Assembly: GCA_002269645.1 (NCBI GenBank) | Contig: NIVC01000085.1 | Span: 868,001-932,000 of the forward strand | From: Macrostomum lignano | Lineage: Eukaryota | Direction: 5' to 3' | Length of the DNA: 64,000 nucleotides | Shown: positions 7,750 through 63,784 of the stretch, piece after piece | Layout of the letters: every line of letters begins with the position of its first letter | How positions within the stretch are numbered: the stretch's first letter is position 1 | Notes under the pieces: model-generated | Seen by the model: only the letters and a program-made list of their open reading frames with translations | Database searches by the model: none | Told to the model about the DNA's origin: nothing | Position numbers and translations under genes: made by a program

Positions 7750-39456
<31,707 letters not shown>

Positions 39457-42696: not shown

Positions 42697-43668
42697 CGGA
42701 GGAGAGGGAGACACCGGAGGAGGAGAGGGAGACACTGGGGGAGGAGAGGGAGACACCGGAGGAGGAGAGGGAGACACCGGAGGAGGAGAGGGAGACACCG
42801 GAGGAGGAGAGGGAGACACTGGGGGAGGAGAGGGAGACACCGGAGGAGGAGAGGGAGACACTGGGGGAGGAGAGGGAGACACTGGGGGAGGAGAGGGAGA
42901 CACTGGGGGAGGAGAGAGAGACACCGGAGGAGGAGAGGGAGACACCGGGGGAGGAGGAGGGAGACACCGGGGGAGGAGAGGGAGACACCGGGGGAGGAGG
43001 AGGGAGACACCGGGGGAGGAGAGGGAGACACCGGGGGAGGAGGAGGGAGACACCGGGGGAGGAGAGGGAGACACCGGGGGAGGAGAGGGAGACACTGGGG
43101 GAGGAGAGGGAGACACTTGGGGAGGAGAGGGAGACACTGGGGGAGGAGAGGGAGACACCGGGGAAGGAGAGGGAGACACTGGGGGAGGAGGGAGACACTG
43201 GGGGAGGAGAGGGAGACACTGAGGGAGGGTAGGGAGACACCGGGGGAGGAGAGGGAGACACCGGGGGAGGAGAGGGAGACACTGGGGGAGGAGAGGGAGA
43301 CACTGAGGGAGGATAGGGAGACACTGGGGGAGGAGGAGGGAGACACCGGGGGAGGAGAGGGAGACACTGGGGGAGGAGAGGGAGACACTGGGGGAGGAGG
43401 GAGACACTGGGGAGGAGAGGGAGACACTGGGGAGGAGAGAGGGAGACACTGGGGGAGGAGGGAGACACTGGGGGAGGAGAGGGAGACACTGGGGTAGGAG
43501 AGGGAGACACTGGGGGAGGAGAGGGAGACACTGGGGGAGGAGAGGGAGACACTGGGGTAGGAGAGGGAGACACTGGGGGAGGAGAGGGAGACACTGGGGG
43601 AGGAGAGGGAGACACTGGGGGAGGAGAGGGAGACACCTTGGGAGGAGAGGGAGACACCGGGGGAGGAA
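42697..43668. repeat. 21-bp purine/G-rich minisatellite (GGGGGAGGAGAGGGAGACACT)
   Basis: About 1 kb tandem array. Confidence 0.94.
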
Positions 43669-44439
43669 GCAAGAAGGGAGCTCTCAGGCTGGCAGTCACT
43701 TTAAGGGTACATGATTTAAATATGTTGGAAGTGTTATGACTGAGGCTTTCGGAGGCTGAGGCTGAGGTTGTCGGATTTGCAGCTCGCAGCTGCTTAATTA
43801 CATATATTTCCGCTCAGTTCTGAGCCAAGATTTTCTAGCTCTCTTTTTTATACCAAATTTAACTTTTTACGCATGCGCATAGTAGTAAATTGATATCTAT
43901 GTCCAAGCCATAGCAGGAAGTACATGATGAAATCAATTTTCAGACTGATTATACTGATTCTTTGAGCAGGTGCTTGAATAATACAGAAGCATCTGCACAC
44001 GACATGTTGAATAAAAGTACAATAAAAGTAAAGGAACTACCTTTAAAATATTTATCAGAAGCATTCACAGCACAATTTTTCAAACAGCCAGAGAAGCTTA
44101 AAAAATTCCGAGTTCAACTCAAGCTGCTGCATCAAGTCTCTCCAGCCTCTCCCTGACCCAGCCGACCATTGAATTTTCCAGGTTCATGCAGATAACTGCT
44201 ACCTGTGCATTTCGCTTGAATATTTCATAAAAAAGCATTGGCAATTGAGTACTGATGTTCGCAGAACAAAATCGCAGAGAAAAACCCGCTTCAAGGAGAC
44301 ATGCAGTTTTAACAGAAACTTTGGTATTAATACCTTTTTGCAGATATTTACATAAAACCAATTAAAGTACATTACCTGTTTCTTCTGAAGCAGTTCAGCG
44401 AAGGGCAAAAATATGGTCTTTCAGTTGTTTGTGTGTGTT

Positions 44440-45929
44440 CTAACTCACAAACGTATGGAACTGCACTCCGAGGTGCTGCCTCAAGTAGCGGTTCCTGACT
44501 CGAACCCACCTCCGGGTCGGCTTCCTCAGTCTCTCCAGCTTCTGTCTGACCCAGCCGATCTTCTCCTCGTCCTGCGTCTCCATGGCGACGCGTCTCTCTT
44601 TCTCGATCATCTCCATCTGCTGCAGGCTGAGCTTCACGTGCTCGCGGCAGTCGCTGTAGTGAGCCAGAGTGAGCAGCTCCTCCAAGTCCAGGTCTCCAAG
44701 CAGCTCTCGCTTCCAATCCTTTAGTTTAATTGCAGGTGCGCGATTGCGGAGCAGCTCAGCTTGGAGACTCCAGCTCAGGCAGCGGAAGTTCACGTACAGG
44801 TGGGAGGAGAGAGGCTGCGACAGTCTGGCTGTGAACAGAGTCTGCGTGAACTCGGGAAGGAATGGGAAGTGAGGCGGAGAGTCGCAGGGGAGGCAGAACC
44901 TCCACGCCCAGTCTGAGTCTTCCGGTGGATTTGTAATGTAGATCTCTTTTTGAATATCCTGTGGCTTCAACCCTGACTCAACCTGATGTCTCTGCAGCTC
45001 CATCGCGAGTCTCTCAGCCTCTTCAGATTCTCCGAACTTTAAATGCGCCATGGCGTTCATACACAGGACGGCGCACTTGCACCACTGCAGCTCATGCAGG
45101 AGACTGAGCTGGCTCATCAGGGTTTTTCTGTCGCTCGATTCCGACTGCAGCTCGCTCATACACTGATGCACCACACTGTACACGTCTGCGAATATATTGT
45201 AAAAATCCAACCACCTAGTTCCTTCCCTGATCTCCGTGAAAGCGGGCGACGCTGTCAGAGGCAGCAGAGTGAACAGATGAAAGTAGAACTTCTCTGACTG
45301 CAGAGGTCTCACGAGTCTCCTCAGCTGCTCGACCACTCCGCCGATGTCACTTCTCAGCTCACGAAGTCGGTCTCGAACCTTGTCCTTCGTTTTATCGAAG
45401 TCGCCGCCGATTCCAGCGTTCTTGAAGTAGAGCGGAGCGTCGGACATGAAGAAGTGCGGCATGCACTCATCGGGCGAGCTGCTTGAGTCGATGAAGCTCA
45501 GCATCATGTCGAGAGACTCCTTGAGCAGAGCGATCAGATTGTGGGGCTGCCAAGCGTCAATTTGAGGATCTGTGCCATGCTTCTCCAGCATGAAGAAGAG
45601 CAGAGTCTTTGCATGGTAGGTCTTGAGTCCAGGTGTGTCCAGAGTGAGCGGCAAGTGTCTCTTGAAGATGAACTTGATGAGTGTGAACAGCTGTCCCTGT
45701 ACTGTGCTCAGCTGTCTCATGATGTGTTTCTCATTGAAGCTGAAGCTCACTCTGAGCTCGTTGGTCTCACTCGGTCTGGTCGCCCGAACGAGGTGAACAT
45801 TATCATTACTAGATGGAGTCAGTTTCTCAATTTTGTACTCACAGAAACTGCTGCAGCACTCGATCGCATGGCACGTGTCCTGTGCAGGCCGAACACCGCA
45901 CGGCGTAGCGGTCACTGCAGGTTGGCTGC
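44440..45929 (-). CDS. Mab-21/cGAS-like nucleotidyltransferase, C-terminal exon
   Basis: Open 496 codons after a CTCTGCAG acceptor (phase 1). Contains Mab-21 motifs QDTCHAIEC, LRVSFSFNEKHIM, LKTYHAKTLLFFMLEK, W-x-PHNL and CMPHFF, then a helical extension of about 300 aa. Confidence 0.85.
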
Positions 45930-46519
45930 CTGCAGAGTGCAGTGAGAGGAAAGACGCGTTGTAGCGAGTGATAAAGATGTGTTGGTTTGAAACTGCAGAT
46001 TTTCTCTTGGCTCGTTAGGAATTTCGAGTGTTTGACTGTCTACTTAAACTACATGTGAGAGCTATCCTTTAACAGTAGGAAGACCACGCTATTTTTCCCC
46101 ATGGGGTAAAGACCACGGGGTGTACTCCTATTACAAATACACACTACCCATTTCACGATATCTCGCAAACCGAATTACCGATTTTCGTAAAAGTCCACCA
46201 TATGGATAAAAATTTTCCGCCCTTTCCGACCAACTAACTTTAAAAGTCATCCGACTTCAGTATCGTCAAGATATTCAACTATTATTGTCGAAAACGCTGG
46301 TGGCAAGGACAACCACCACTATACACGTTATAAACTTTTATGGTGAATCCATATTGACTCAATAATTTGGGTCCATCTGTCATAGAGGCCTTTGTTCTCA
46401 GCATCCAAGGAACCAGGTTCCCCTTCATCACCATCTGGAGCATCGTCGGTGACCGTCGGGACTTTCAATAAAAGCACCCGATCGGCATCTCAGAGACGGC
46501 TGCGTTCCCAAAACTGAAA

Positions 46520-46735
46520 TGGAAGAATCCTCTTCTGCAAGCAGCATTCAGTCAGCAGACATAATCGGTGAATGAAATGGACGGTGGCGACTCACTAGAG
46601 TGACCTGTAGACATACAGGCGACCTTTGGACCTTCAACGAAGTGCCACCACGCGGCCCTGACGAGCTGACACCGCCAACATCGTGCTTTTTCTATCAAGG
46701 CACCAAACCAGGCATGTCTGCATATTATAAAATGG
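46520..46735 (+). mobile_element. Possible N-terminal remnant of the piggyBac transposase
   Basis: Acidic stretch followed by LWTFNEVPP..PPTSCFFYQGTKPGM, resembling the W...P..F.G.PG N-terminal pattern of PGBD4-like transposases. Confidence 0.35.
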
Positions 46736-46819
46736 TCCTGCACCGTCTTCAGCATGGTGGCGGTGCAAGCTCGTCAGGGCCCAATGGTGGCACTCCATTG
46801 AAGGTCCTGAAGGTCGTCC

Positions 46820-48486
46820 AGACAGAGCTGAATGCTGAACATGAACAGGCTGGGACCAAAACTGTCGCGATCATGTTCACCAGCAGGGTAAACTGGCATA
46901 TTCGCCCACTAAAGCTTTACGGGGTGGAAATCCCATCCCAGCAAACAAAGTGTCTTGGCGTTACGCTGGACCACCGGCTGAGCTGGTCCACCCACGTCCA
47001 GGCCAAAACCAAAAAAGCTGTCGCGATTCTTGCGCAGCTGCTCAGAGATGTTGGCACCACCTGGGGCCTCACCCCGAAACGGCTCTGGTGGATCTATACC
47101 GCTATGGTCCGACCGGCCGTTACTTACGCCGGCCTTGTCTGGACAAGCGCCTTGCAGATTAAAACCTGCCACGATGCCCTTAAAAAGGTGCAGGGACGCG
47201 CGTGCCGCATGATCCTGAATGCCCCGCTCTCTTCTCCCTTTGCTCCCCTCAACGCCTTTCTTTGTCTTCCGCCTCTGGACATCTTTGTCCGTCGCGAGGC
47301 TGCTACCCGCCGGCTCATCGAGGCGATGGCGAAGCGCAAGATATTGCCGCACTCTGACCTATGTCTTAAAGTTCTGGAGGAGAGCAGGAGCGCGTCTGTC
47401 CTTTCGAACGCTGAGCCGCGCTCCCTCAATCTCTACCAACACTTCAAGGTCAATATACCCTCCAGGGAGAATTCCAACGACAGCTGGGCCCCTCAGGAGG
47501 TTCACTGCTTCACTGACGGATCCTCCAAAGACGATTTATCCGGCTTTGGAGTCTGCATCCTTATCAACGGCCGCGTGATCGCTACTCACGCCCAACACAC
47601 TGGCAGACTCTCCAGCGTCTTCCATAACGAAGTCCTTGCCATCAGCTCCTGTGCAGCTGTGCTCCACTGCAGGGACTTCAAGGACATAAGAATCTTCTTC
47701 CACTCTGACAGCCAGGCCGCTTTGCAAGCCCTGTGTCACACCACTACGAACTCCCGAACAGTCCGCGACTGTATCGGGCAGCTCAACAAGCTGGCTCGGA
47801 GGAACACCGTCCGGCTCACGAGGATCCCAGGACACGCTGGGTTCAAAGGTAACGAGCTCGCCGACTCCCTCGCCAAGGCAGGTAGTTCTGGCTCGCTCCT
47901 TGGCCCCGTGCCCCTGGCCCCTATCCCCGCCACAGTCATTAATCGTAATCGTCCTGCATTTACGCAGATGGGATGGCATTTCCAACTGCCGCCGGTCCCG
48001 TGCGGCTGTGCCCAATCCGTCCCTCAAGCTGCGGAGAATCCTTTTGAACCAAAATCAAAAAGATATCCGCGCTCTCACTATGACCTTCACAGGTCACGGT
48101 TGCTTTGCCAGGCACTGCTTCCTCCGAAGTGTTCGCCGGAGTGAACTCTGCCCCTTCTGCAACCTCGAGAACGAAGATGCCAAACACTTCGTCTGCTATT
48201 GCCCGGCGTTCAACCGAGACCGGCTCAACCACCTCGGGCCCAACCCGTCCCTGGACGACGTTTGCCGGCCCGAGAACATCCCACGGCTCATCCGGTTCCT
48301 CCGGGCCACCAAACGAGCCTCCGTCTTCCCCACCGAAGACAACGCTGCAGACAGGACCGGCAGACCTCCCTGACCGGCCCCGCGCCTTAGCCTATGCGGG
48401 TCTTTCAGGGATTAGCGGAATGGGCGACGCTCGCCTCCCCGCTGCGTCTTCGGACCGCCCTGCAGCTAGGTCAAGTAAGTCAAGTC
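46820..48486 (+). mobile_element. 5'-truncated non-LTR retrotransposon with RNase H (R1/LOA-like), frameshifted
   Basis: RT C-terminus KCLGVTLDHRLSW..WGLTPKRLWWIYTAMVRPAVTYA; RNase H FTDGS..EVLAI..SDSQAAL..IPGHAG..GNELAD; C-terminal TGHG..CPFC..HFVCYCP zinc knuckle; short AAGTC-type tail at 48471-48486. Confidence 0.88.
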
Positions 48487-49572
48487 ATCCGCAATGCCCT
48501 CTGGAGAGATAGGTTCAAGCGGCTGCTTTCCTGCCTTCGGTTCTCTACGACTGCACGGATGTCCAGAAAGGGCACTTGGCCAAAATCCAGCCATTTCTAC
48601 ACCAGCTGCAGCAGGTGTGCAGCAGCAATTACATGCCGCGTCAGCACATTTCCGTGGACGAAACGCTCGTCTTGTACAAAGGGTGTCTGCTGTTCAAGCA
48701 ATACATCCTGACTAAGAGGAGCAGGTACGGTGTCAAGCTGTACTGCCTGTGCCAGTCGGAGACCGGCTACTTGTGGAATTTCGCAGTCCACTCCACGGAG
48801 CACGCGAATGCACAGTTTGGACTGGGACTCGAGTTCGGCGGCCTCTCTATTAGTGAGCGAATTGTGGCCGAGCTGTTTCGTGAACTCCTTCACATGAATT
48901 ATAACGTGTTCACGGACAGCTGGTTCACGTCGCATCGGCTGGCCGTTTGGCTGCTGGCGAAGGGAACTCGGCTCACCGGCACTGTGTAAGTTCGTGGACA
49001 GGAAGAGCAGCGGAACAAAGACCGTGTATCTCCTGGGCACTGCTGAGTCCGTCGGGGAGGCGAGCAGCAGGTGATCGCAAAGCCAGTGACAGTGGTCACC
49101 TACTCGAAGAGTATGGGCGGCGTGGACCGTATGGATTCGGCAGCGAACCCCTATTTGGCCAGCCGGAAAACGCTGCGCTGGTTTCAAAAACTTGCGTTTT
49201 ACTTGCTGCTGCTTCTAGTTCGGAACTCGTGGATCGTCCAACCGCCAGCACGGAGGCACGAAGACTTTCGTGGCATTTCTGTGCAAAGCGGTCAGCATCT
49301 TGGTGGAGGAGACTGGCAGAGGCAGGCGCCATTTCGCTGTCAGGGCAGGCCGTCCTGCAGCAGTCGGACCGGCAGGTGACGGCCCTGCAGTACAGCATTT
49401 GCCGACCAAAGCTCAATTGAACGCTGCCCATGTTCGGCCGCGCAATCGATGCCGCGTTTGCAGCGAGAACCGAATATCCAAGAAGACAGTGTACATATGC
49501 CCTGATTGTCCGGGAATGCCAGCACTTTGCATAGGCCAGTGCTTCAGAAACTGGCACAGCCAACCGCACTGA
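48487..49572 (+). mobile_element. Decayed piggyBac (PGBD4-like) transposase
   Basis: RDRFKRLLSCLRF, ISVDETLVLYKG..FKQY..YGVKLYCLC..TGY, VFTDSWFTS, MGGVDRMD (DDD triad) and a C-terminal Cys-rich RCRVC..CPDC..LC..CFRNWH. Spread over four frames with stops. Confidence 0.92.
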
Positions 49573-49794
49573 CTTTTACAGACCTCGTCTTCATTTTTTT
49601 TTCTTCCACACCCCCGGTTGACTTTGCTCTCTCCTTTCCTAACCCGCTCCCCTTTTTGTCCCCACCCCTTGAATAAAATTTAAGCAAGTATTTATGGAGT
49701 ACCCTAACAAGGCGGTTCCCGTTGCTATGGTATCTATCCAAAATTATCAGTTCTAATCCTGGTTCTGTTCTGTTGGTACTTTCACTTATCTTCT

Positions 49795-50160
49795 CTCTAA
49801 CTATAAAAATCAAAGCTCTGTGTGTCTGTATGTCTGTGTGTGTGGCGGTTCGGGATCGCTATGGACTCCCAAACCGCCTAACCAAATGACACTAAATTTT
49901 ACCTCCACCCTAAACTCACTACGGAGAATGTCTTAGGCTATCTTTAAATTTCCTAAATTTTAGTCTTCCTACCTAAAAGTGCAAAGAACTGCTCAAAATG
50001 CGCGATTTTTTCACTAAATGCTCCATAGCGCTGCTCCACTTCTACCAATCGTCTTCAGTTTAACACAATTAATCTTTAACTATTTTGACACAATCGTGTA
50101 AAATTTCGAGTCTCAAAGTTAATCCTGAACAGCGCTGAGCACTTTTAAATTTAGGCTGTT
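49795..50160 (+). mobile_element. Possible non-autonomous Helitron-like 5' end
   Basis: TCTAACTATAAAAATCAAAGCTCTGTGTGTCTGTATGTCTGTGTGTGT resembles the TC + TATAAA + (GTCT) microsatellite starts of DINE/Helitron-type elements. No 3' CTAG end was identified. Confidence 0.3.
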
Positions 50161-51044
50161 TTCTTCAGCGAGACAGCCACCCCAACCTCCGCCTGCCTGC
50201 CTCTCTTTCCTGATCTGGGCAAAAGGTGTAAATGGGATTTAAAATGACTAACTTTCGGCTGCCATAAATTTGCTTCACGTGAAGCGATTAACTTCAAATT
50301 TGACACAATTTTTCAGTGACTCATTCTCTGTCTAAATTTAAAGTTTTAACTCCGTGTCTCAATCAGGACGGAAACTGTAAGCATGTGAAGTTTGTCTGCT
50401 TTTTCTGTTGTTTGTTCCGCTCACCACTCATTCCCATTCCCCGAGCCCAGACGAAGGATCAGGCGATAGGGCTCAATGTACATAGCGAATCTACAGTGTT
50501 TTGGAATAACTTTTTAATAGCCCTCTCAGTACCCCCGCGAGTGGAGAGGCGTGGAGAGGAGAGACAGTTTAGCGAGAGATTCAAACCACAGATACTATAA
50601 AGTTTATAGTATCTGTGATTCAAACCACTGTCCTCTGTATAGACAAGTCTGCAGCAGTTTAAAGGTGGATGGCAAATCAAGGCGATGTGGGATCTGGGAT
50701 AACTGATTACAAAGCAATCCTACTAAATTAGTTACACTTACACCATGAAAATTTTAACATTAAGATTCGCATAAGGTACTTTATAATTTAAATGGCTCCT
50801 AAGAAATGCGTATTTCCTTGGTTGTTAGACTGCTGCAGACTGCGGTGGTGGAGCTGGAGATACACAAATTCCTCTCAGTCTCAGGGCTGCTAATTGGCAA
50901 GAGAAATGACATGATTAGAGCATGAGAAATGATAACAAAGCAACCATGATAGTACTACGTCCCATAAACTGGCTTTCGAAGCAGGGATCGGCAGATTTTT
51001 ATCTCAAAGGCCAGATAAAGAATCAAGCTCATGGCTGCGGGCCA

Positions 51045-51386
51045 TACGAGAGTGAAAAGGAAAAGGAATAGACTATTAGAAAGAGAGAAGAGGGATAAGA
51101 GAAAAGATAGAAGATAACAGGAGAGACGAGGGGATGAGGAGAGAGCAGAGAATATGGAACGAAGAAGCGAGAGGAGGGGAGAGAGAAGGGAGAGGAAAGA
51201 GTAGAAGTGAGAAGAGGGGAGAGACGAGACAGAGGATCGATGAAAGAGGGGAATAGGGAAGAGTGAGAAGAGATGAGAGATGAGAGAACAGAGAGGCAGA
51301 TGAGAGAGGATCGAGAGGAGAGATTAGAAAGGATAGATAAGAGGGGAGAGGGGGAGAGAGAGGAGTGAGAAGAGAGGATAAGAGAT

Positions 51387-51449
<63 letters not shown>

Positions 51450-52595
51450 GAGAAAGAAGAGAGGGGAAAAGAAGGATGATAGAGTAAAGGGAAGAGGAGA
51501 AAGGAAAGAGATGAGATTGTAGAGATGAGAGAGTAGAGATGGGCGATAAAGGAAAGAGAGAGAGCAGAGTGCAGAGAGACGAGAGAAGAGAATAGAGGGG
51601 ACAAGAGGGAAGAGAAGAGAGGAGTAGAAAAGAGTAGAGTCAGAAGAGGGAAAAAGAACAGTACAAGGAGACAAAAGAGGAGAGAAGGGGCGTAGACATG
51701 ACAAATGAGAGAGCAAAGACGGGAGTAAACGGACGATATATGAGAGGAGAGGAGAGTGGAGAGAGGACAGAGAAGACAAGAGAGGGAGAGAGTATAGAAG
51801 ATGGAAGAGAAGAGAAGAGAAGAGAAGATGGAAGAGAAGAGAAGAGAAGAGAAGAAAGAAGAAAGGAAAGAGAGTCCTGAGTCAAAAAAGGGAAAAGAGA
51901 AGAGTACAAAAGGAGAGAGGTGAGAGAACATATGAGAGTAAAGATGACAGATGAGAGAAGGGAGATCAGAGAGCAGAAACGAGAGTGAACAGATCAGACA
52001 GACGAGAGATGGGAGAGTAGAGAGAAATGAGGAGAGATAAGAAATAAGAGATGAGAGGCGGAGATAAGGGAGAGAAGAGAAGTGAGTGAGGAGAGAGGAG
52101 GGGAGGGGAGAGAATCGAGAGGACAGGGGAAATTGGTGAAAAGGAGGGAGGAGAGGAAAAAGGGGAGAGATTATAGAGAAGAGAGATGGGACAGGAGAGA
52201 GCAGAGAAATGAGAGGAAAGAGAGCAGAGAGAAATGAGAAAAGATAAGATACAGAAGAGAAAAGAAGAGAAAGGAGAGATAAGAGAGCAAAGACGAGAGA
52301 GAAGAAATGAGAGGGAAGAGACAATATAAGAGATGAGAGGAGAGAGTGGACAGAGGAGAGGAGAGAGTTGAGAGAATAGAGGAAAAAGGAGAGAGGAGAG
52401 ATGAGGGAAGTGTTGAGAGAGGGTAGAGTAAGAAGTGAGAAAAGGGGAGAGGGAAGAGAGAGTAGAGAGCAGAGAGAAATGAGAAGAGATAAAAGAGGAG
52501 AAATGAGATATGAGAGACAAGAAACGAGAGAGAAGAGGGGAAACAAAAGAGAAGATAGAAGTTTCAAAGGATCCAAGGGACATAGGGAGAGACAG
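51045..52595. repeat. Polypurine (AG-rich) low-complexity tract, about 1.55 kb
   Basis: Plus strand is almost entirely A/G and includes a (GA)n run. Confidence 0.93.
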
Positions 52596-52822
52596 AGGTA
52601 GAGGTCAGAGTTTGCCTGACATTCTGCGCAGCACCTCAGCCAACAATATCAGTGCTTGCTTCAAATCTTAATTTTAAGCGAATGTATACTCTATTTTATG
52701 TTTATTCTATCCTAACTATTAACAAGTTTTGTTTGAGTTCGACCTCAGATTTTAGAATAGATGCAAAAATAATTCCAGGGATTGGAATTCCCCGGGTTCA
52801 AAATCCGCGGGTTTCAACAGCT

Positions 52823-55285
52823 TGTATTATTCATAAATGATGCTAACACAAACAATGCTCAATATATAATTATTAACGCACTGGGGCGCACGGGACACGA
52901 AATCGGGGTGGGGGTACTCTGGATGTACAGTCAATATTTCAATAGTCAATCAGCTAGTCACTTAGTCATAAGTACAGCGGTAGAATCCAGCGCTGCCTCA
53001 TCTCCCCCCTTCGAGACGGATAGGGGGCATGCCTCGAGTTGGCCGAGCTGGGTAGCGACGTACTGCTGTTTGATTTGGGCCTTGTTCAGATTCGGTGGGC
53101 GGGTCCTGACCGAGTTCGCCAGGCCGGTCCTGACCGAGTTCGCCAGGCCGGTCCTGACCGAGTTCGCCAGGCCGGTCCTGGCCGAGTTCACCAGGCGGGT
53201 CCTGACCGAGTTCGCCAGGCGGGTCCTGACCGAGTTCGCCATGCCGGTCCTGACCGAGTTCGCCAGGCGGGTCCTGACCGAGTTCGCCAGGCGGGTCCTG
53301 ACCGAGTTCGCCATGCCGGTCCTGACCGAGTTCGCCAGGCGGGTCCTGACCGAGTTCGCCAGGCCGGTCCTGACCGAGTTCGCCAGGCCGGTCCTGACCG
53401 AGTTCGCCAGGCCGGTCCTGACCGAGTTCACCAGGCGGGTCCTGACCGAGTTCGCCAGGCGGGTCCTGACCGAGTTCGCCATGCCGGTCCTGACCGAGTT
53501 CGCCAGGCGGGTCCTGACCGAGTTCGCCAGGCGGGTCCTGACCGAGTTCGCCAGGCCGGTCCTGACCGAGTTCGCCAGGCCGGTCCTGACCGAGTTCACC
53601 AGGCGGGTCCTGACCGAGTTCGCCAGGCCGGTCCTGACCAAGTTCGCCAGGCGGGTCCTGACCGAGTTCGCCAGGCCGGTCCTGATCGAGTTCGCCAGGC
53701 GGGTCCTGACCGAGTTCACCAGGCGGGTCCTGACCGAGTTCGCCAGGCCGGTCCTGACCAAGTTCGCCAGGCCGGTCCTGACCGAGTTCGCCAGGCCGGT
53801 CCTGACCGAGTTCGCCAGGCCGGTCCTGATCGAGTTCGCCAGGCGGGTCCTGACCGAGTTCGCCAGGCGGGTCCTGACCCAGTTCGATAGGTAGGCTTTG
53901 GCCGAATCGGTTTGGCTGGACCTGGTCTTCTACAACGCGGCTCAGCTGATCCGCATGCGCCAGGCGATGCGACCGCCTTGACGAGCGATTAGGGCGGTGT
54001 TGGTTCCCTTCTGCACGACGAACTCAGCTCGCTCCTGACGCTGCTGATCACCAGGCGTGTACGACAGGCTCGCTCCGATGGTGTGCGCATGGTTATCGGG
54101 TTGCGTAGTTGTCGACCCATGAGCTGCCACGGGCTCTGCTGGCGCCCAGCATGCGGCACACACCTGTGGTTTAGGAGTACCCTGGACAGGAACGACTCGT
54201 AGCTTTCGGAATGGTCCCACGCCGCAGCTGCTCTCTTGATAGACTGGACCATCCGCTCGGCCAAGCCGTTAGACTGAGGGTGTCGCGGGGAGGTCTTGAT
54301 GGCGCGGCAGCCGATTCTTTCCAGCCAGGCGATCAGATTGGCGTCGTGGAACTCGGCGGCGTTGTCGCTGACCAGCACATGAGGCACGCCGTTTCTAGCA
54401 AAGACTGCCTGCAACACCGGCTTGACTGTCGCCGCGTCCCTGTTTTGCACTCGTACAGCCTCGGGCCAGCCGGACATAGCGTCAACTAGAATGAGCAGGA
54501 GTCCGACCCTCGGCACGTACGCATGATCCATGTGGACTCTGTGCCACGGCTTTTCCTCGTCAGGCCACCTGTGGACACTCTCCAGAACACTCGGGGGCAG
54601 TCTTGAGCAGGTCGGGCAACCTCGCACGTAGGCCTCGACGTCGTTGCAATAGCCAGGCCACCAGGCTGAGTTCTGTAGGCGAGCGCGCGTTGAGCCAGAT
54701 CCATGATGCGTGTCGTGCACAATTCCAAGAATGCTTTGTCGGAGGACAGCCAGGATGACTGGGCGATTACCGTAGCAGAGAACTACCTCGTCGGTCGTGA
54801 GGGCGTGTCGGATGGCCTTGAAAGGTCGTTCGGCCGGCGAGCAGTTTGACCATCTGTTGATTGCAACGCGTTTCATGACATCAAGCAGCAGTCGGTCCCT
54901 TTGGGTCTCTGATTTCAGCTCCTGCCACGGGATCACAGCCTCGCCAGTCCAGTGAATGATGCTTTCCGGCCGCTCTGTCGGCTCGTTGCTGCTTTCACCT
55001 TCGAAATCCAGCCGTGAAAGTGCGTCTACTTGCGGAATCGATTCGCCTTTAGTGGAGATGATGTCATAGTCAAAAGCCATCAGTTTGAGTGCCAATAGGA
55101 GAAGTACGAGCTATCGCATTGACAACCTTCGGCAGCTGGAGCCTCGACCCGAAGATGAATTCAAACGGGCGATGATCCGTTCTGAGAGTGAAGCGCGACC
55201 CTAATAAGAACTGTTTCGCACGCTCCATAGCCCAGACGATCGCCAGTGCCTCTCTCTCGATGTTTGAATACCGTGCTTCTGCACT
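52823..55285 (-). mobile_element. 5'-truncated Ty3/Gypsy LTR retrotransposon (RNase H end, integrase, PPT, 3' LTR)
   Basis: RYSNIEREALAIVWA..TDHRP; integrase HHCC (HDTHH..WWPG..CPTC) and DDE (HMDHA, SDNAAEF, NGLAERMVQ); PPT AAGGGGGGAGA directly followed by TG at 53000; candidate LTR 53000-52823 ending ..AATACA. Confidence 0.92.
53097..53885. repeat. 24-bp minisatellite (GTCCTGACCGAGTTCGCCAGGCGG) inside the Gypsy integrase tail
   Basis: About 33 units; the minus frame reads PGELGQD(P/R) in register with pol. Confidence 0.93.
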
Positions 55286-55913
55286 GCATCAATACACATG
55301 CTCGCTAATGTCATGCTTGTTTATTCACCCTTAAAATTTTATTCAGCACATTTCAGCACCCCGCGAAAGCTGCTTAATGAGACGCCACAGAAGTTCGACG
55401 CTCTCTGAACAGCCAAATTAATGCACCTGTAAGGCATGAGCCCCTGCGCACACTGAGTTCGTCCAGCTTCAGCTTCAGCTGGTCTGGCTTCATAACGTTG
55501 CAGCTGAGCACAGCTGCTCAAACATCATCAGGACTCAGTGCCCCGCAGCAAGGCACCAGTCAGGCAGTCAGGGCGGCTTCAGTTTATTTTGTTTGAATTT
55601 TCCAACTGAGAGCAGCAGCACCTCAGCAGAGCCATGCCGCCTACCGTAGGTCACCCAATCACCGCTGCACCCACTCTGCTGCAATCAAAGCAGTGAATTC
55701 AAAACCCAATGGCCCGCCTCAGCCAGTCGGCATCAGAGTTTTCTTTTCAATTTCGCCTGCCGCTTGTTTCAGCACCCAAGCCGACATTCGCAGTCACAGA
55801 AGCTGCTGGAGGCTGGGCGTCACTCGGTTGCGAATTTAAAATTGAGCAAAGTTAATGGGCTTCCAGTTGCATGCGGATCTCAGCATTGTGATGATGAATC
55901 CAGCCTCACTCAC

Positions 55914-56284
55914 CTGCTCCCGTTGCCACCTGTGCGTGGCCCTCCGTGACCTGCAGCCGAGTGGCGGCTCTGCATGAGTCTTTCTTTCTTTTGCAGCCAC
56001 TTTTCAGATGGAACTCTTGTCCAGAAACCAGCACAGTCCAGTCAATGTCCGAGTCTGCAGCTGTCCTGCCGTTCACTTGCACCAGACTGTTGGCCCAGCC
56101 CTCTGCGTAGCTGCCCGTCATCTGCCGGCGATAGCCATCCTGTGTGAGGACTCGAGCGACTCCTTCCAGCCAGTCAGCCAGTCTCTGCTGACACTCTGCT
56201 CTCTGCTCGGTGAATCCCGCATCGCTAAGCAATCGATGCAGCTTCTCACTCAGACGCCTGTCTTGCTGGGAGTCGTCTGAGAGC
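55914..56284 (-). CDS. Mab-21/cGAS-like nucleotidyltransferase, catalytic exon
   Basis: SEKLHRLLSDAGF..TGSYAEGW..AADSDIDWTVLV gives the GS motif plus DxD of pol-beta-type NTases. Ends GCA G|GTGAGT (phase 1), matching the acceptor at 45930. The start-codon exon was not identified. Confidence 0.82.
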
Positions 56285-56649
56285 CTGGAATGATGCGAGA
56301 TGCGTGTGGGTGATCTGAGTTGGATGGACAGAACAAGCAGGAGAGCTGAGAGTGCAGCTGCTGCTGCTCTCAGACTGGCATCTCAAGCAGGAGATCCCAA
56401 AGACCAGTCCAAAACACATTTCAACCCTGCTGAGTTTTGCAGCAACTTCTGCCCCAAGCTGCCAGCCTGTTGAAAGACGCAATGCGGCAGAGTAGTAGGC
56501 ATGAGGGAAGTTCTGGCACAAAATTGTCAAAATCCCCCTTAGATCAACATCTACTAAGATCTATTCATACATAATGCGCTTACATTTAAATTCAACTATC
56601 ACAATGCAATACCTACACCTCTTTATTTAAATGGGAAAACTAGTCGATT

Positions 56650-57378: not shown

Positions 57379-58668
57379 CTAAACTTTACTGGACGAATTA
57401 TTGATCAGGTTTACCTTCATTTTCCTCTACAACGCATAGATAATAAACAGATCAACAGCAGTCACAGCACCTTGTTGTTTCCTCTCAATATTTGTAACAA
57501 TATTAACAGGTCTATTGTCTGCAGGCATTTGTCTAGCTGACACGTCAACTCCGAAGATTGGGTACAACTCTTTATACTGTAGTGATGTCATGGCGATCCC
57601 ATTATTCTCTTTTACAGCCAGGTGTGCCAGTTCATTGTAAACTTTACTAATCTTGTTCTCTGAGAAATCTCCATTCTGTGGCAATGCGGGGTACAAATTG
57701 TCACTGATCTCATGTTGAACTGATCGAACGTTTCCATGTAAGTATCTACCTACACTAGTAGTACTCCTCATAGTGACAACAATGTACCTTGGATTGCTAC
57801 AGGAGCCTTCTTTAATGCAAATATTGTGTCTAGTGTCATTGCGCTCATCTCTACACATATAAGCTGTATAGGCAACATCAATATCCTTCTCAATAGCCTT
57901 CAAGTATTCTGCTTTTAGTGCAGTCTTTAGCTCAATGGTTTCAAGATACAACTCCACACCAGCTAATTTTACCTCCATCATCGTGTGGTTAGCTCCAGTC
58001 CAAATTCCTCGATCCCGATCATCTCTAGTCAACCTAAATGTGTAGCTAAAGTTGCTTGTCAACCGATTGAAACTATTACAGAAACCACTCATAAACCTCA
58101 AAGGTACAAAAATATCTACAGACCTGGATTCTTGGCCGCATCATCTGCCCCTGCAAGAGCATAGTTGTATCTCTCCTTTCTCTTTTTATAACCGGGATCA
58201 TTCACATCCCCTTTGTGCTCATTGGGAATAAAGCCAGCTCCACTCCCCAACTGGATGAAATCCGGGTTCTCAATCAAACACTGAGTGTCATAGACAATGC
58301 CAAAAATTGGCTATTCTCTCCAACTCTGTGCTTCCATTCGACACGCTAAACTCTTTGAACATGTACGCCCAAAAGTTACTAATCAATGTCACATTTGCAT
58401 TGTGTAGATCATCATTAGCATGAGCAGCGTCTGCGCCACCTTTTGTCTTGAATTGGAAAGTCATGTAGAATTCACTTCTTAGACTGTGAACACTGACCAA
58501 TGACGAGCAACCATTGTATGTAAAAGTCAACGTTTGACCTGGACCTAAATTAGTTTCATTCTGGTTCTCATGACTAGGAACTCTAACTTGTGACGCTTTG
58601 ATGGTGCTGTCATCACTCAAAATTGGTTTGTTAATATTGTAGAAAACTGGTGTCAGAGGATCGTTCAT
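57379..58668 (-). pseudogene. Major capsid protein (double jelly-roll, Polinton/adintovirus type), disrupted
   Basis: Reconstructed length about 430 codons: MNDPLTP..PILSDDST..TLISNFWAYMF..ELERIANFGI..AGF..VDIFVPLRFMSGF..NPRYIVV..LYP..PIFGVDVS..LFIIY. Two compensating 1-nt frameshifts (about 58305 and 58135) and a premature TAG at 57427-57429. Confidence 0.72.
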
Positions 58669-58711
58669 TTTTTTAGCAAATATTTTAGATGAAAATAAAA
58701 ATATATAAAAA

Positions 58712-60042
58712 ATGAAACAAAAACTCTTCAATCGTATCACTGAACTGGATAAGCTAGCACAAGCGGAGAAACGAGTCACTAACTTAATCAACAAAGAGCA
58801 ACAGTCATACAATGAGTTCATTCAAGCGGCCACCGAGTTTCACAAACCTTGTTACACAGAAGCGAAGAAAACCATTGACACAGTAAAGTAGGTGATATTC
58901 AAGAAAGTCAGCTGCAAAATGTTTTGTCTAACATTCCAACTGTCACAACCCCTCAGCAACCTCAACCATCCCAGCAACCTCAGCAACCTCAGCAACCTCA
59001 GCAACCTCACCAACCTCAGCAACCTCAGCAACCTCAACCATCTCAGCAACCTCAACAACCTCAACAACCTCAACCATCCCAGCAACCTCAGCAACCTCAA
59101 CAACCTCAACCATCTCAGCAACCTCAGCAACCTCAACAACCTCAGCAACCTCAACAACTAAAAGTAAATGATAACTTTTTTGGTCCAGTAGGGGAGCAAG
59201 CAGCCAGTGGGTTTAAATATGTCTTTGGAATTAGCAAATGGCGAGAGCAAATTACTAATCAACCAGCGGACTATCACCTAGAAGTCACAACACAAAGCAT
59301 ATCTGTCATCAAAGATCAAAATTCTAAACGAATCCCCTTTACTCAAAGTTTACTAGACTACATGACTAAAAATCAGGAAAAAATATCGGAGAAGCAGTTA
59401 AAGAATTATAGAGATCTAGTTACCTTCGCTTTAGAGAGGGATATAGACATTCTCAAGACCCCGGAAATTTTACTATTTTTACATAAAAACGGAGTATTCT
59501 TGAACACTTTTAGAAAATATAAACACTTTAAAAAATGGTTTAATTTACCGGATCAAGAAGAGGTCATACAGAGGGCTCTTCAAACCCAATCCCAAGCGGC
59601 TACATCTCAAACCCGATCTCAAGGGGCTACACCTCAAACTCAAACTCAAACTCAAAAGCAACCTACAACTGAAGAAGTACTAGAAGCACTCGAGAAAGTA
59701 GAACCAAATAAGATTGCCCAGTACAGAAACCAGCACCCAGATGAATGGCAGCGTTTGCAGCAAATCTATCCAGAACGAATGAAGCGAATCAGTGATAGAG
59801 TATTTACACCCCGACAACCGTCTCCAGGGACTTCATCTTCCGATCTGTCTTTTGAATCACCAACAGGTGATGGCTTGCCAGATGCTTACAAGCGGTTAGC
59901 TGTTCTCCTTGGCGCAGCAAAGACCGGAATGAAGGATGAGAATAGAAAAGAGTTTGTTCACATCTTAGACAAAATGTTAGAGAAGAAGTATATCGATAAA
60001 AGAGCAAGAGAACTTTTGCTTTCACGGTTTAACAAAAAATAA
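58712..60042 (+). pseudogene. Viral ORF of unknown function with a PQQ repeat (one frameshift near 58870)
   Basis: MKQKLFNRITELDKL.. (frame of 58712) shifts into the open frame 58879-60042. C-terminus TGDGL..YKRLAVLLGAAKTG..EFVHILDKML..YI resembles a C-terminal motif recalled from Polinton-like element proteins. Confidence 0.55.
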
Positions 60043-60058: not shown

Positions 60059-63000
60059 ATGCCAATCATTTTCGAAAAAGACATACAACAACAACAACAA
60101 CAACAAGGTACTGCTCCCGCCGGCCACGAACAGTAGCCAGAAAGGGGGGAGCAGTCAGAAAGCGCATCTCTGGGCCATTGCCCTCAGGAAGTCGCATCCC
60201 CCTGCTTGGTCCGGGGCGCCAGCGTCACTCAGAAGTCGGTCAGGGTATCGCACCGTTCGCCCTTGGCCTCGCCTCCGCGGTCCCTGCAGCTTGAGCAGCA
60301 GCACGTCGTGTAGCGGCTCAGGACAGCGGGCCTCCGACCGGATGACGTGGCCAGCCAGTCGAAGTCGCCGCCCGCGCAGCAGGTCAGAAGGCCGCGTCAG
60401 GCGCGCCCTCGTGTAGAGCGCGGCATTGGTCTCGCTGCCTGGGCCGCTGCGCACTCCGAAAGCCGCACGCAGCATTGCCGCATGCGCAGCGTCCAGCTGC
60501 CTCTCCAAGGCGTCCGTCAGGGTCCAAGTCTCGGCGTTGTACAACAGGACAGTCTCGACAACTGCCTGAAACAGCCGAGCCTTGAGCCCGTCGTCCAGGG
60601 CCTCAGATTGGAGCACGGAGCGCACAGATTGAAATGCGGCCCAGGCCAGTCCTCGTCGTCTCTTCAGGTCGTCGGCAACGTCCGGCACGGAGCCGCCGAG
60701 GTACACAAAGCGCTCGCAGCGGGTAAGCATAAATGCATTCCCGGCAGCGTCTCGGTAATTGATCTCGGCCGGCAAGTCGGAGGGCACCGTGAACACTACC
60801 GTCTTCCGCGCGTTCAGCTTAAGGCCGACCCGCGCCGCTGCCGCCGTCAGGCCATCAAGCAGCCGCTGGGCACCTTCAGCCGTCGATGAAAGTAGCGCGA
60901 GGTCGTCCGCATAGCCGAGAACGGAGAGCCGCTTCTCCGGGTGCCGCCGACTCGTGCGTCTTCTCAAAAGGAAGCAGTCATCCAGGTTGGGCAGGCCGGT
61001 TCTCAGCACCCAGTCCAGTGCCAGCACAAACAGAAAAGGCGCCAAAGTGTCACCCTGCAGCACGCCTGGCGACGTGCTGAATTGGTCTGACAGTCCATCT
61101 GGCGTCATCACCGAAGCGGTCGTGTCCTGGTACATCGCCATGATGGCGGAAATCAGTTGCTCCGGTACATTGTACGCACGAAGCACGAGAGGCAGCGCGC
61201 CGCGAGCCAGCGAGTCGAAGGCCTTGAGGAAATCAATGAAGATCACCACGAGACTTGACTGATGGATGCGCGCCTCCTCGATGATGCGGCGGAGGGCTAG
61301 GATCTGCGTCACTGTGCCGCGATGTGGGCGGAACCCGTTCTGCTCAGTTCGCAGGAACTGGTCCAGCACAGGCTGTAACCGAGCCAGCAGCACCCGGTTG
61401 AACAGCTTCGCGGCGCAGGACATAAGCGAGATCCCTCTGTGCTCCTCCTTTCGTGTCGTGCCTGGCTTCTTCGGGATCGCGACGATGTGCTCGGTTGTCC
61501 ACTCGCGGGGCGCGGCATCTCCAGAGAGGACACCGTTCATCACACGAGCCACCTCAATGGCGACCCTTGTGACTCGCAGCACCTCGATAGGCACCTCGTC
61601 CGGTCCCGGGGCGCGACCTCCCGGCGCCTGGCGAGCGAACTGCACAATGTCGTTGCTGGTCACTGGCTGGGTGTTGAAATCTTCCTGCGACGGCAGCGCC
61701 GTCTCGAGCGGCAGTGGCATCACTTCTGGCAGAGGCGGTGGCGGCGCGTTGACGATATCGGCGAAGAAGTCGCGTAGCTCATTTCTGCGCGCTTCTGGCG
61801 TGTCGCCGGTCAAGTTTAGCACCGTTTTCTTCTTGCGACCAGTCAAGGCGTTGATTGTCGGCCATACGAGCCGATTCCGTTGGTCGAACCCTGCGGAGGT
61901 GACGCTTCGGATGGCATCGTCAACAGCGGCTTGCTGCCGCCTGACATAAACGTCTGACAGGGCTTTCTCGGCCTCTGCCGTCGGTCTCCTGGACCGTCGC
62001 AGCCTCTCGACTGTCCGCCTCGCCTCTTGAACCTCCTTGTCATCCGCCCAGACAGGGAGACTACGGGCTGCAGATTTCATCAGTGGCAGAGTTTTGCTCG
62101 CTGCCGTCGCTACTGCCGCGCTAATTTCAGAGTAGTTACCGGTGCTCGCAGACTCTCCCAGTGCGGTGGCAAACGCGTACGCGAACCTGCCGCGGGTGCT
62201 AGAATCTCGCAGAGCCCGGAAGTAGCGGCGTGGGGGTCGCTTGGGCGGCCTGTACAGCGGATCCCGGATGCGAAGGTTGCAGAAAAGCAGGCGGTGGTCG
62301 GATCGGATGGACAGCGGGGCCATCGTGTCGCAGTCTGTCACCCGACTGCGCTCGCGGTTACGAACAAGAATGTGGTCGAGCTGGGCCCGGCGCGTCGTGG
62401 CGTTTCGGCGCGCGTTCCGCTTTCTTCGCTTACAACCAGCAAAAGTCGCCAAACGAAAAGCAGGCTTGCGGAAGCGCGTGTTCGCCGACACCAGATCTTG
62501 CCGCGACATAAGGTCCGCAAGCGCACTAGAGTTGCCATTCTGGCGCGGGGACACGAACGGGGAGCGCTGGGACCTCTCCGCGACAGCGTTGAGATCGCCA
62601 AGCACCACCAGAGTGTCACGCATTGCGACCGACTCGAGCTGCTCCGACAGGAAATCAAAGAACTCCTGCGCCTCATGCTGATGGGCAGCTGTCGGTGCAT
62701 ACGCGCAGAACAGCCGGGCGTTACGGCCTCGCAGTCTCACATCCACACGCAGAAGCCGAGGTGACACAGGGACACAGCAGACACTCTGCTGCAGCCGCGG
62801 TCCGACTAGAGCGCCGACTCCTCCACGTCCTCGACTGTCCGCTGAGGTGAAAAACAGGGTCCAGCCGGCACCGAGATCCTCACGTTGGAGGCCGTCCTGC
62901 GTCACAATTGAAACTTCCTGCAGCATCACAATGTCCAGCTGCAGATCGGATGCCAGCTGCGCCAGCATTCCCCTCCTCCAAGCAGGTTTGAGAGTGCGAC

Positions 63001-63784
63001 AGTTGAAGGTGGCAATTCTAAACGCGCTTCCTGGTACAGCTGGGGCCCGGACTTGTTGGGCCTCACGGTCTCCTGCGCTACCAGGCAGAACCGATTGGAT
63101 AGGGGCCGGGTCAAGCAAACTTGCAGACTTGCGAAAACGACCTTTCAGCCGTCCTCGCCTGTTGCGCTCACGCCGCCGCTGGATGCGCCGGTGGAGACTT
63201 CGTTTGCCTCGCCGGTTGCCCTTCCTGCCGCTGTTAGCAGCCGCAGCGTCCGTGTTAGCAGAGCGCGGCTCACCGCTCTCACCTGGGCAAGCGCCAGCCA
63301 GATGGCAAGCGTCACCCGGAGGTCGCAGCATATTTGCACCGAAGTGCAAATTTAATAGAACATACAAAAATACTACGATGAAGAGGAACTCAATCTTATG
63401 AAACGTGGATCTGGTCTATTTCCTGCAGGCCACTATCCAAGAAAAGAACGCTCTGGAAATGGCCTCGCAGATCTGATCGCACAAGGGGCCCGGATCTTTA
63501 AGGTTGTTGGTGAGAATAAGGAAAATATAAAGAATATTGCTGAAGCAGCCAGTAGTGTAGCTACAGCGGCTAAAAAGATTAAGGATACAGTCAATGAAAG
63601 CAAACAAAACACAGTTGTTCAACCGCTTGCTCCGCTTGCTCCAACTGCTGACAGCATTGATCCATCTATCTACGCTTCAAATTTGACTAGGGTGCAAGAC
63701 CTGTTGAAAAAAGACACACAGCTGACAGAAAAAGAGACAAATCCCAACACAAAAGACACACAGGTGACAGAAATAGATAAATGA
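60059..63784 (+). pseudogene. Small viral ORF (148 aa when reconstructed), split by the RTE insertion
   Basis: 60059-60088 (MPIIFEKDIQ) joins in frame to 63368-63784 (KYYDEEELNLMKRGSGLF..RSGNGLADL..) once the LINE and one TSD copy are removed. Confidence 0.75.
60089..63359 (-). mobile_element. Full-length RTE-clade LINE, intact APE+RT ORF (ATG 63331 to stop 60155, 1058 aa)
   Basis: APE motifs IATFNCRTL, LQEV, LGDLNA, LDHILV, SDHRLL; RT motifs QNGFRPHRGT, FIDFLKAFDS, GVLQGDTLAPFLF, YADDL, YLGG; 3' (TTG)n tail; TSD ACATACAA at 60081-60088 and 63360-63367. Confidence 0.96.

What the first reader, a model, noticed from the sequence alone, without database searches (positions are those of the whole stretch)
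44440..56284. cGAS-like receptor gene reassembled across a 9,984-bp transposon-filled intron
Two ORFs 10 kb apart join exactly: GCA G|GTGAGT (55914) to CTCTGCAG|GC AGC (45929), giving ..HAQVATGA-G-SQPAVTATPCG.. and about 620 aa. The GS motif and DID lie in one exon and the third acidic residue (QDTCHAI) in the other, so the NTase triad appears complete. Mab-21-fold cGLRs are established nucleic-acid sensors that make cyclic dinucleotides; activity of this divergent member is inference.
Basis: partly seen in the sequence, partly recalled or inferred. Interest (0 to 1): 0.75.

Follow-up and report, generated by a model that had tools for sequence, protein, structure and literature searches.

The report
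Flatworm cGAS-like gene, transposon-swollen intron

Summary
On the minus strand, exon A (56284..55914) and exon B (45929..44440) join in frame across a 9,984-bp GT-AG intron. The product is 619 codons with no stop. All 41 related proteins, all named ones from Macrostomum lignano, run straight through the junction. Two paralogue loci have an intron at the same codon, 562 and 491 bp long, with near-identical splice sites. In the window about 9.5 kb of decayed transposon pieces and satellites (46030..55523) replace about 79 bp of that intron.

The protein has a Mab-21/cGAS fold by Pfam, profile comparison and structure search. It carries the motif T-G57-S58 ... D79-I-D81 ... D141.

The family is not new. 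Li et al. 2023 (PMC9980059) list M. lignano ankyrin-fused cGLRs and cloned five of them. One, PAA68676.1, is 84% identical to this protein. None was among their 15 active enzymes.

The gene is incomplete in the window. There is no start codon and no ankyrin exons, and paralogue homology stops at 56490, where more mobile DNA begins. The copy looks as constrained as its annotated paralogues.

Verdict: an unannotated member of a known family, with unproven activity and low interest.

The parts
56285..56490 (-). 3' remnant of the upstream intron. It is homologous to the intron that precedes the equivalent exon in paralogue L001. Homology to the paralogue ends at 56490.
   Evidence: blastn aligns L001 12361-13322 with window 56490-55524 at 92% identity. 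The acceptor CATCATTCCAG|G is identical to L001.
55914..56284 (-). Exon A, 371 nt, entered in phase 1. It encodes residues 1-123 plus the first base of G124: the N-terminal spine helix, T-G57-S58 (56115..56110) and D79-I-D81 (56049..56041).
   Evidence: tblastn hits from nearly all 41 homologues. Equivalent to L001 exon 12564-12932.
45930..55913 (-). Spliceosomal intron of 9,984 bp, GTGAGT...TGCAG, at the same codon as the 562-bp (L001) and 491-bp (L002) introns of two paralogues.
55524..55913 (-). Ancestral 5' part of the intron, conserved with the paralogue intron.
   Evidence: blastn, 92% identity to L001 12933-13322.
46030..55523 (.). Inserted block of about 9.5 kb of decayed mobile elements and satellites. 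It takes the place of about 79 bp (L001 13323-13401) of the paralogue intron.
   Evidence: Gap between the two blastn segments; flank sequences. No LTRs or TIRs were recovered.
53989..55095 (-). LTR-retrotransposon integrase fragment (Integrase_H2C2 + rve).
   Evidence: Pfam E-values 4e-12 and 7e-10.
53098..53886 (.). 24-bp minisatellite, about 33 copies.
   Evidence: TRF score 1375; repeat family D1.
51029..52583 (.). Purine-rich (AG) low-complexity tract.
48576..49572 (+). Frameshifted piggyBac-type transposase remnant (DDE_Tnp_1_7 + zf-Tnp_2).
   Evidence: Pfam E-values 6e-25, 7e-5 and 2e-9 on three ORF pieces.
46600..48144 (+). Non-LTR retrotransposon 3' fragment (RNase H).
   Evidence: Pfam RNase_H E-value 1.8e-10.
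45930..46029 (-). Ancestral 3' part of the intron, with the polypyrimidine tract and acceptor.
   Evidence: blastn aligns L001 13402-14925 with window 46029-44519 at 89% identity. The acceptor CTCACTGC[A/G]CTCTGCAG|GCAGCCAA is conserved.
44440..45929 (-). Exon B, 1,490 nt including stop TAG 44442..44440. It encodes residues 124-619: D141 (45879..45877), the RVSFSFNEK strand, the Mab-21_C helical lobe (residues 219-288, 45645..45436) and a family-specific C-terminal helical domain of about 285 aa.

Best explanation
The window holds the last two coding exons of an unannotated paralogue, or a copy from another assembly, of the Macrostomum lignano ankyrin-repeat cGAS-like receptor (ANK-cGLR) family. 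SHOWN: exon A and exon B are spliced in frame across an intron whose position and splice signals are shared with paralogues. In this copy, nested insertions of an LTR-element piece, a piggyBac remnant, a non-LTR piece and satellites expanded an intron of about 0.5 kb to 9,984 bp. The coding sequence is as well preserved as in annotated paralogues. The product has a Mab-21/cGAS-type two-lobed nucleotidyltransferase fold, the motif T-G57-S58 / D79-I-D81 / D141, and a C-terminal helical domain of about 285 aa with no known fold. INFERRED, by analogy with characterised cGLRs (Li et al. 2023; cGAS): the three acidic residues hold two Mg2+ ions and the GS loop holds the donor NTP triphosphate. An activating ligand is sensed by the Mab-21 surface and/or the ankyrin or C-terminal modules and orders the active site. 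The enzyme then makes a cyclic or linear oligonucleotide second messenger for a downstream receptor. The ligand, the product, the receptor, and transcription of this particular copy are all unknown. My probabilities: about 0.97 that the exon join is the real gene structure, about 0.65 that this copy is expressed as a complete mRNA, and about 0.35 that the family makes nucleotide messengers.
For: Join and frame. Continuity of homologues across the junction. Same intron position with 562- and 491-bp introns and conserved splice sites in L001 and L002. Intron flanks 89-92% identical to the paralogue intron, with a 9.5-kb insert between them. TE content. Preservation: no stop in 619 codons; dN/dS of 0.57 and 0.51 against P0001 and P0006, compared with 0.53 between those two annotated genes; only one substitution unique to the window (N303K) at positions invariant in the ten closest paralogues, the same as or fewer than annotated members. 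Fold and family: Pfam Mab-21_C at 25.3 bits against a cutoff of 24.1; PDB profile hits to the cGAS helical lobe at E=8e-4; hhalign 97.9% and E=4e-13 to bivalve cGLRs over residues 166-315; AF2 pLDDT 75 and pTM 0.78; Foldseek top 47 hits all MAB21L1, cGAS or MiD51, best E=2e-5, TM up to 0.54. Motif: the GS and D141 columns align with those of canonical cGLRs. Literature: PAA68676.1 (= P0002, 84% identical) and four other M. lignano proteins are in the curated cGLR screen set and are listed as ANK fusions (PMC9980059).
Against: The window has no start codon and no ankyrin exons. Paralogue homology ends at 56490, and upstream lie a DJR-like ORF and a LINE, so the copy may be 5'-truncated. No identical protein is in the databases, and no transcript data were available. 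The N-lobe has no significant sequence match to Pfam Mab-21 (PF03281) or to PDB NTases. The GS-to-DxD spacing of 20 is at the upper limit of the published motif, and the third Asp is flanked by Q and T rather than hydrophobic residues. The loop across the junction (residues 119-140) is modelled with pLDDT below 50. The 15 active enzymes of Li et al. came from insects, anemones, molluscs, hydras and corals; none of the five M. lignano proteins they cloned is reported as active.
Confidence: 0.85

Rival explanations
1. The copy is a 5'-truncated or silenced relic, a young pseudogene. Mobile-element insertions upstream of 56490 and in the intron have cut the two exons off from their promoter and ankyrin exons, and the open frame survives only because the damage is recent.
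For: No ATG before M55 and no ankyrin or 54-nt exon anywhere in the window. Homology to the paralogue breaks 205 bp upstream of exon A. The upstream 7.5 kb is mobile or virus-like sequence. The product is absent from the protein databases. A dN/dS near 0.5 is only moderate constraint.
Against: 619 codons are open at dS of about 0.16 from the nearest paralogue. All three splice signals are intact. Only one private change falls at family-invariant positions, no more than in annotated genes. The dN/dS equals that between two annotated paralogues. Long TE-laden introns are compatible with expression, and the missing exons may simply lie beyond position 64000.
Confidence: 0.25
2. The gene structure is as described, but the protein, like the rest of this family, is a non-catalytic Mab-21-fold scaffold or nucleotide-binding adaptor, as MAB21L1 and MiD51 are. 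It would work through its ankyrin and C-terminal protein-interaction modules rather than by making a second messenger.
For: The best structural match is MAB21L1, and MiD51 also matches. The N-lobe is very divergent in sequence. There is an unusual insertion of about 8 residues between GS and DxD. No flatworm enzyme was reported active in the published screen. Most flatworms have no cGLR other than Mab21-like proteins.
Against: G57, S58 and D81 are invariant and D79 nearly so across 14 paralogues down to 30% identity. D141 is kept, or replaced by E, in all but one degenerate member. That pattern is expected if catalysis or metal binding is under selection. Li et al. curated these proteins as having complete active sites.
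Confidence: 0.3
3. The two ORFs are unrelated or transposon-derived reading frames, and the in-frame GT-AG join is a coincidence.
For: The ORFs sit in a region dense with mobile elements.
Against: Dozens of homologous proteins cover both ORFs end to end with adjoining coordinates. Paralogue loci show the same two exons 0.5 kb apart. The intron flanks are conserved.
Confidence: 0.01

Closest known systems
Macrostomum lignano ANK-fused cGLRs catalogued by Li et al. 2023 (for example PAA68676.1 / BOX15_Mlig016402g1 and PAA93208.1; screen entries 89-93)
   Same: 83-86% protein identity to the closest members over about 95% of the query. Same exon/intron layout in the two loci examined, same GS/DxD/D motif, same Mab-21_C lobe and same C-terminal domain with the DWAWRFC..FPFLPEF motif.
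   Different: This copy is not in the protein databases. Its homologous intron is 9,984 bp instead of about 0.5 kb. Its ankyrin-encoding 5' exons are not within the window. Its last 30 or so residues differ from most paralogues.
Bivalve and cnidarian cGLRs (for example Mizuhopecten and Crassostrea entries 81-83 and 98, Stylophora entry 84 of Li et al. 2023)
   Same: Profile-profile homology of 97.9% over the 'hVHhV ... WRhSFS.AE' strands and the Mab-21_C helical lobe. The TGS..EG[FW] loop is shared and the third Asp falls in a shared column.
   Different: Only about 20% identity. The Macrostomum proteins have about 8 extra residues between GS and DxD, a shorter DxD-to-Asp spacer (57 against about 85 residues), no detectable PF03281 match, and added ankyrin and C-terminal modules.
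Vertebrate cGAS and human MAB21L1 (PDB 4k9b, 5eom and others)
   Same: Predicted two-lobed Mab-21 fold: Foldseek probability 1.0, E=2e-5, and up to about 400 aligned columns against cGAS. The sequence matches the cGAS helical lobe.
   Different: 12-20% identity and TM only 0.4-0.54. No zinc-thumb or DNA-binding-surface features could be assessed. Activity and ligand are unknown.

Membership tests
cGAS-like receptors (criteria of Li et al. 2023, PMC9980059) | Active-site motif h[QT]GS-X8-20-[DE]h[DE]h-X50-90-h[DE]h | tested here: met
   M55-T56-G57-S58; 20 residues; D79-I80-D81-W82; 57 residues; Q140-D141-T142. Two caveats: the first spacer is at the upper limit, and the third Asp is flanked by Q and T rather than clearly hydrophobic residues. 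The D141 column aligns with the D of 'VDLVPAL' and 'IDIAFSF' in coral and bivalve cGLRs.
cGAS-like receptors | Sequence homology across the C-terminal helix bundle (Mab-21_C) | tested here: met
   Pfam PF20266 at 25.3 bits against a cutoff of 24.1; PDB profile hits to cGAS at E=8e-4; hhalign 97.9% and E=4e-13 to bivalve cGLRs.
cGAS-like receptors | Sequence homology across the N-terminal NTase core | tested here: inconclusive
   No PF03281 hit for the window protein or for three other M. lignano members, whereas a bivalve cGLR hits it at E=3e-9. No PDB NTase hit for residues 29-198. Only motif-level similarity was found.
cGAS-like receptors | Predicted structural homology to cGLR / CD-NTase enzymes | tested here: met
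   AF2 pLDDT 75 and pTM 0.78. Foldseek PDB top hits are MAB21L1, cGAS, MiD51 and a CD-NTase, at E=2e-5 to 3e-2, probability 0.99-1.0, TMt 0.38-0.54. Residue-level superposition of the triad could not be checked.
cGAS-like receptors | Ligand-dependent synthesis of a nucleotide second messenger | not testable with these tools
   This needs biochemistry. In the published screen, five M. lignano paralogues were cloned and none is among the 15 active enzymes described.
M. lignano ANK-cGLR subfamily | N-terminal ankyrin repeats encoded by upstream exons | tested here: inconclusive
   No ankyrin-coding sequence anywhere in the window at tblastn E<=1e-3 or at relaxed settings. The gene runs off recognisable homology at 56490, and only 7.5 kb of upstream sequence is available.
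M. lignano ANK-cGLR subfamily | Family-specific C-terminal domain (DWAWRFC..FPFLPEF..YVNF) | tested here: met
   Present and conserved at residues 335-619. AF2 pLDDT 78. No significant PDB fold match, best E=0.42.
Spliceosomal intron at a conserved position | GT-AG boundaries, same phase and position as in paralogues | tested here: met

The most novel reading that the evidence does not exclude
The ANK-cGLR expansion in Macrostomum has at least about 90 clusters at 50% identity, and every named member is from M. lignano. It could be a working, lineage-specific array of innate immune sensors in a phylum that has otherwise largely lost cGLR signalling. Under this reading the ankyrin repeats and the fold-orphan C-terminal domain recognise ligands other than dsDNA or dsRNA, which would explain the negative published screen, and the window copy is an expressed member despite its 10-kb intron.
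Probability: 0.2. Interest if true: 0.55.

Novelty: new member of a known kind. Interest (0 to 1): 0.18.

Why it matters
For annotation, the result shows that an ab initio or ORF-based pass would split this gene in two or miss it, and that paralogue-guided splicing recovers it. Biologically it adds one more copy to a large flatworm-specific expansion of ankyrin-fused cGAS-like proteins. That family's existence is published but its function is not. The family would matter if shown to be active, because M. lignano is a tractable laboratory flatworm (transgenesis and RNAi are available, from my own knowledge) in a phylum otherwise thought to lack cGLR immunity. A transposon-expanded intron is commonplace in itself.

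Tried and rejected
1. I looked for the missing 5' exons with tblastn, using 41 paralogues at E<=1e-3 and N-terminal pieces at E<=50 with word size 2. Only noise came back.

2. I looked for LTRs, TIRs or target-site duplications that would delimit the inserted elements. Only satellites and two short hairpins were found, so the insert is described as decayed fragments.

3. I tried for a sequence-level match of the N-lobe to Pfam Mab-21 (PF03281) or to PDB NTases and found none. The only 'hits' for residues 88-149 were to a viral envelope glycoprotein at E=0.04-0.5. I take these as chance matches of a Cys/Gly/Pro-rich loop and did not pursue them.

4. Extending hhalign into the N-lobe anchored the GS loop but misplaced DxD because of the insertion. 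I did not use it as evidence for DxD.

5. I searched for the fold of the C-terminal domain and found no significant PDB match. The vague TPR-like hits at E>=0.4 are rejected.

6. For STING in Macrostomum, the literature search and the supplement of Li et al. gave no data, and supplement 4 turned out to hold bacterial CD-NTases. I ran no further search on it without a reliable query.

7. I looked for an identical annotated product and found none, so the source assembly and species of the window cannot be stated beyond Macrostomum.
Full report
OBSERVATION. On the minus strand, an ORF segment ends at ..GCA G|GTGAGT, with its last exon base at 55914. A second segment starts after CTCTGCAG| at 45929. 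Joining them gives ..HAQVATGA-G-SQPAVTATPCG.., with glycine 124 split between the exons. The frame stays open for 619 codons and ends at TAG 44442..44440. The intron runs 45930..55913, which is 9,984 bp. Every number in the finding is correct.

IS THE JOIN REAL? A protein search returned 41 homologues, and all named ones are from the flatworm Macrostomum lignano. The best is 86% identical and none is identical. In tblastn against the window, nearly every homologue hits both exons with adjoining query coordinates. The proteins themselves read straight through the junction, for example P0001 ..GHAQVTAGAGSQPAVTATACGVRPAQDTCHAI...

I fetched two paralogue loci. In L001 the gene for P0001 has exons at 10001-10450 (ankyrin repeats), 12283-12336, 12564-12932 (equivalent to exon A) and 13495-14946 (equivalent to exon B). 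In L002 the equivalent exons are 33409-33744 and 34236-35831. The intron therefore sits at the same codon in both paralogues, where it is 562 and 491 bp long. Donor and acceptor sequences are almost identical across the three loci.

At the DNA level, window 56490..55524 aligns with L001 12361-13322 at 92% identity. Window 46029..44519 aligns with L001 13402-14925 at 89% identity. The first 390 bp and the last 100 bp of the window intron are therefore the ancestral intron. The 9.5 kb between them (46030..55523) replaces about 79 bp of the paralogue intron.

WHAT FILLS THE INTRON. Five features account for most of the block:
- An LTR-element integrase piece at 53989-55095 on the minus strand.
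- A 24-bp minisatellite at 53098-53886.
- An AG-rich tract at about 51.0-52.6 kb.
- A frameshifted piggyBac transposase remnant at 48576-49572 on the plus strand.
- A non-LTR RNase H piece at 46600-48144 on the plus strand.
I found no LTRs, TIRs or target-site duplications, so these are decayed, probably nested fragments.

THE GENE IS INCOMPLETE IN THE WINDOW. Exon A begins at an acceptor (ttccag|G, 56285) in phase 1, and its first in-frame Met is M55, immediately before the GS loop. Paralogues have one or more ankyrin-repeat exons and a 54-nt exon upstream. Nothing like them is in the window, and homology to the paralogue's upstream intron stops at 56490. Beyond that point lie a 61-bp tandem repeat, an ORF with a double-jelly-roll-like domain (57427-58101, minus strand) and an intact-looking LINE ORF2 (60155-63367, minus strand; endonuclease plus RT). 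Either a second large insertion has pushed the 5' exons past position 64000, or the copy is truncated.

IS THE COPY DECAYING? There is no stop in 619 codons. dN/dS is 0.57 against P0001 and 0.51 against P0006, while those two annotated genes give 0.53 against each other. At positions invariant in the ten closest paralogues, the window protein has a single private change (N303K). Close annotated members have 1-6 such changes. All three splice signals are intact. I therefore see no sign of relaxed constraint, although a very recent inactivation cannot be excluded.

WHAT THE PROTEIN IS. Pfam finds only Mab-21_C (residues 219-288), at 25.3 bits against a cutoff of 24.1. A profile of 14 family members (A1) hits the cGAS helical lobe in the PDB at E=8e-4, and a 'cGAS-like receptor 1' chain at E=0.025. 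Profile-profile comparison with five bivalve cGLRs taken from the supplement of Li et al. gives 97.9% probability and E=4e-13 over residues 166-315. That stretch includes the VHLV and RVSFSF.EK strands typical of Mab-21 proteins.

An AlphaFold model has pLDDT 75 and pTM 0.78, with low confidence at residues 119-140, the loop across the junction. Its best PDB matches are MAB21L1, many cGAS structures, MiD51 and a bacterial CD-NTase, with E from 2e-5, probability 1.0 and TM up to 0.54. The N-lobe alone has no significant sequence match to Pfam PF03281 or to any PDB chain.

The catalytic motif published for cGLRs is h[QT]GS-X8-20-[DE]h[DE]h-X50-90-h[DE]h. The window protein satisfies it as M-T-G57-S58, then 20 residues, D79-I-D81-W, then 57 residues, Q-D141-T. 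G57, S58 and D81 are invariant and D79 nearly so in the family alignment. In a MAFFT alignment with three other M. lignano cGLRs, two scallop cGLRs and a coral cGLR, the GS column and the D141 column coincide with those of the canonical enzymes. D141 lines up with the D of TDLIPAF, IDIAFSF and VDLVPAL. The DxD of the Macrostomum proteins lies about 8 residues further from GS than in the others. I could not check the 3-D superposition because model coordinates are not exposed.

The C-terminal 285 residues form a conserved, mostly helical domain (pLDDT 78) with no significant PDB match, best E=0.42.

WHAT IS ALREADY KNOWN. Li et al. [quoted passage not shown] They state that nematodes and most platyhelminths have none apart from Mab21-like proteins, and that some cGLRs are fused to ankyrin or TPR repeats. 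Their table of 140 proteins cloned for the biochemical screen contains five M. lignano proteins, entries 89-93. Entry 93, PAA68676.1 / BOX15_Mlig016402g1, is my hit P0002, which is 84% identical to the window protein. Entry 92 is a near relative of P0012. Their domain table lists these accessions with Ank_2 domains. The 15 active enzymes they describe come from insects, anemones, molluscs, hydras and corals, so no activity is reported for the flatworm proteins.

An exhaustive profile search found 91 clusters at 50% identity with E<1e-30. Every named one I looked up is M. lignano. The first named outsider, from the annelid Lamellibrachia, matches only the Mab-21_C part. The family is thus a large, lineage-specific expansion that is already catalogued.

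MECHANISM. The following are shown: the exon structure, the origin of the long intron, family membership at the level of fold, motif and C-lobe homology, and preservation of the coding sequence. The rest is inferred by analogy with cGAS and the characterised cGLRs. D79, D81 and D141 would bind two Mg2+ ions and the GS loop would bind the donor NTP. Ligand binding would activate synthesis of a nucleotide second messenger that is read by a downstream receptor. The ligand, product and receptor are unknown, and I found no data on STING in Macrostomum.

There are three rival readings. The copy may be a 5'-truncated relic (about 0.25). The family may be non-catalytic, like MAB21L1 or MiD51 (about 0.3; this is compatible with the gene structure). 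The join may be a chance fit, which is refuted.

VERDICT. Interest is low. It would rise only if the Macrostomum ANK-cGLRs were shown to be active sensors.

Noticed in passing
window 57427-58821 (- strand), with 58924-60042 (+ strand): An ORF of 224 aa matches Pfam DJR-like_dom (double jelly roll-like, E=2e-7). Next to it are a 177-aa ORF on the same strand and a Q/P-rich 372-aa ORF on the other strand. This could be a fragment of a virus-like or Polinton-like element sitting just upstream of the cGLR exons.
   Followed up: partly
window 60155-63367 (- strand): An uninterrupted 1,070-aa non-LTR retrotransposon ORF2 with an Exo_endo_phos endonuclease (E=9e-11) and an RVT_1 reverse transcriptase (E=2e-29). 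It may be a young or active LINE.
   Followed up: partly
window 42698-43667: A 21-bp minisatellite (46 copies, 92% matches) about 0.8 kb downstream of the gene's stop codon. It yields long proline/serine-rich ORFs in several frames on both strands, which are artefacts of the repeat.
   Followed up: no
window 44440-45440 (residues ~335-619 of the joined protein): The family-specific C-terminal domain, with motifs DWAWRFCLPCDSPP.FPFLPEFTQ and HLYVNFRCLSWSL, is confidently modelled (pLDDT 78) but has no significant match in the PDB (best E=0.42). It is a fold orphan attached to a cGLR core.
   Followed up: yes
L002 36278-37783: Directly downstream of the P0006 gene, the paralogue locus carries a second, partial copy of the last exon, 83-85% identical at the protein level. 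This is a tandem partial duplication within the family.
   Followed up: no
P0005 residues 829-1036: One M. lignano family member carries a second, divergent cGLR-like N-lobe after the first module (36% identity to window residues 5-201). This is the tandem-cGLR architecture mentioned by Li et al.
   Followed up: no
window 44372-44716 (- strand, alternative frame): The C-terminal tail of paralogue P0004 (..AAQSAVPYVCELGDSQ..) corresponds to a different reading frame of the window's last 100 nt (..AAPRSAVPYVCELEHTQ..). Family members therefore differ by a frameshift or indel near the 3' end, and the last 30 or so residues are not conserved.
   Followed up: partly
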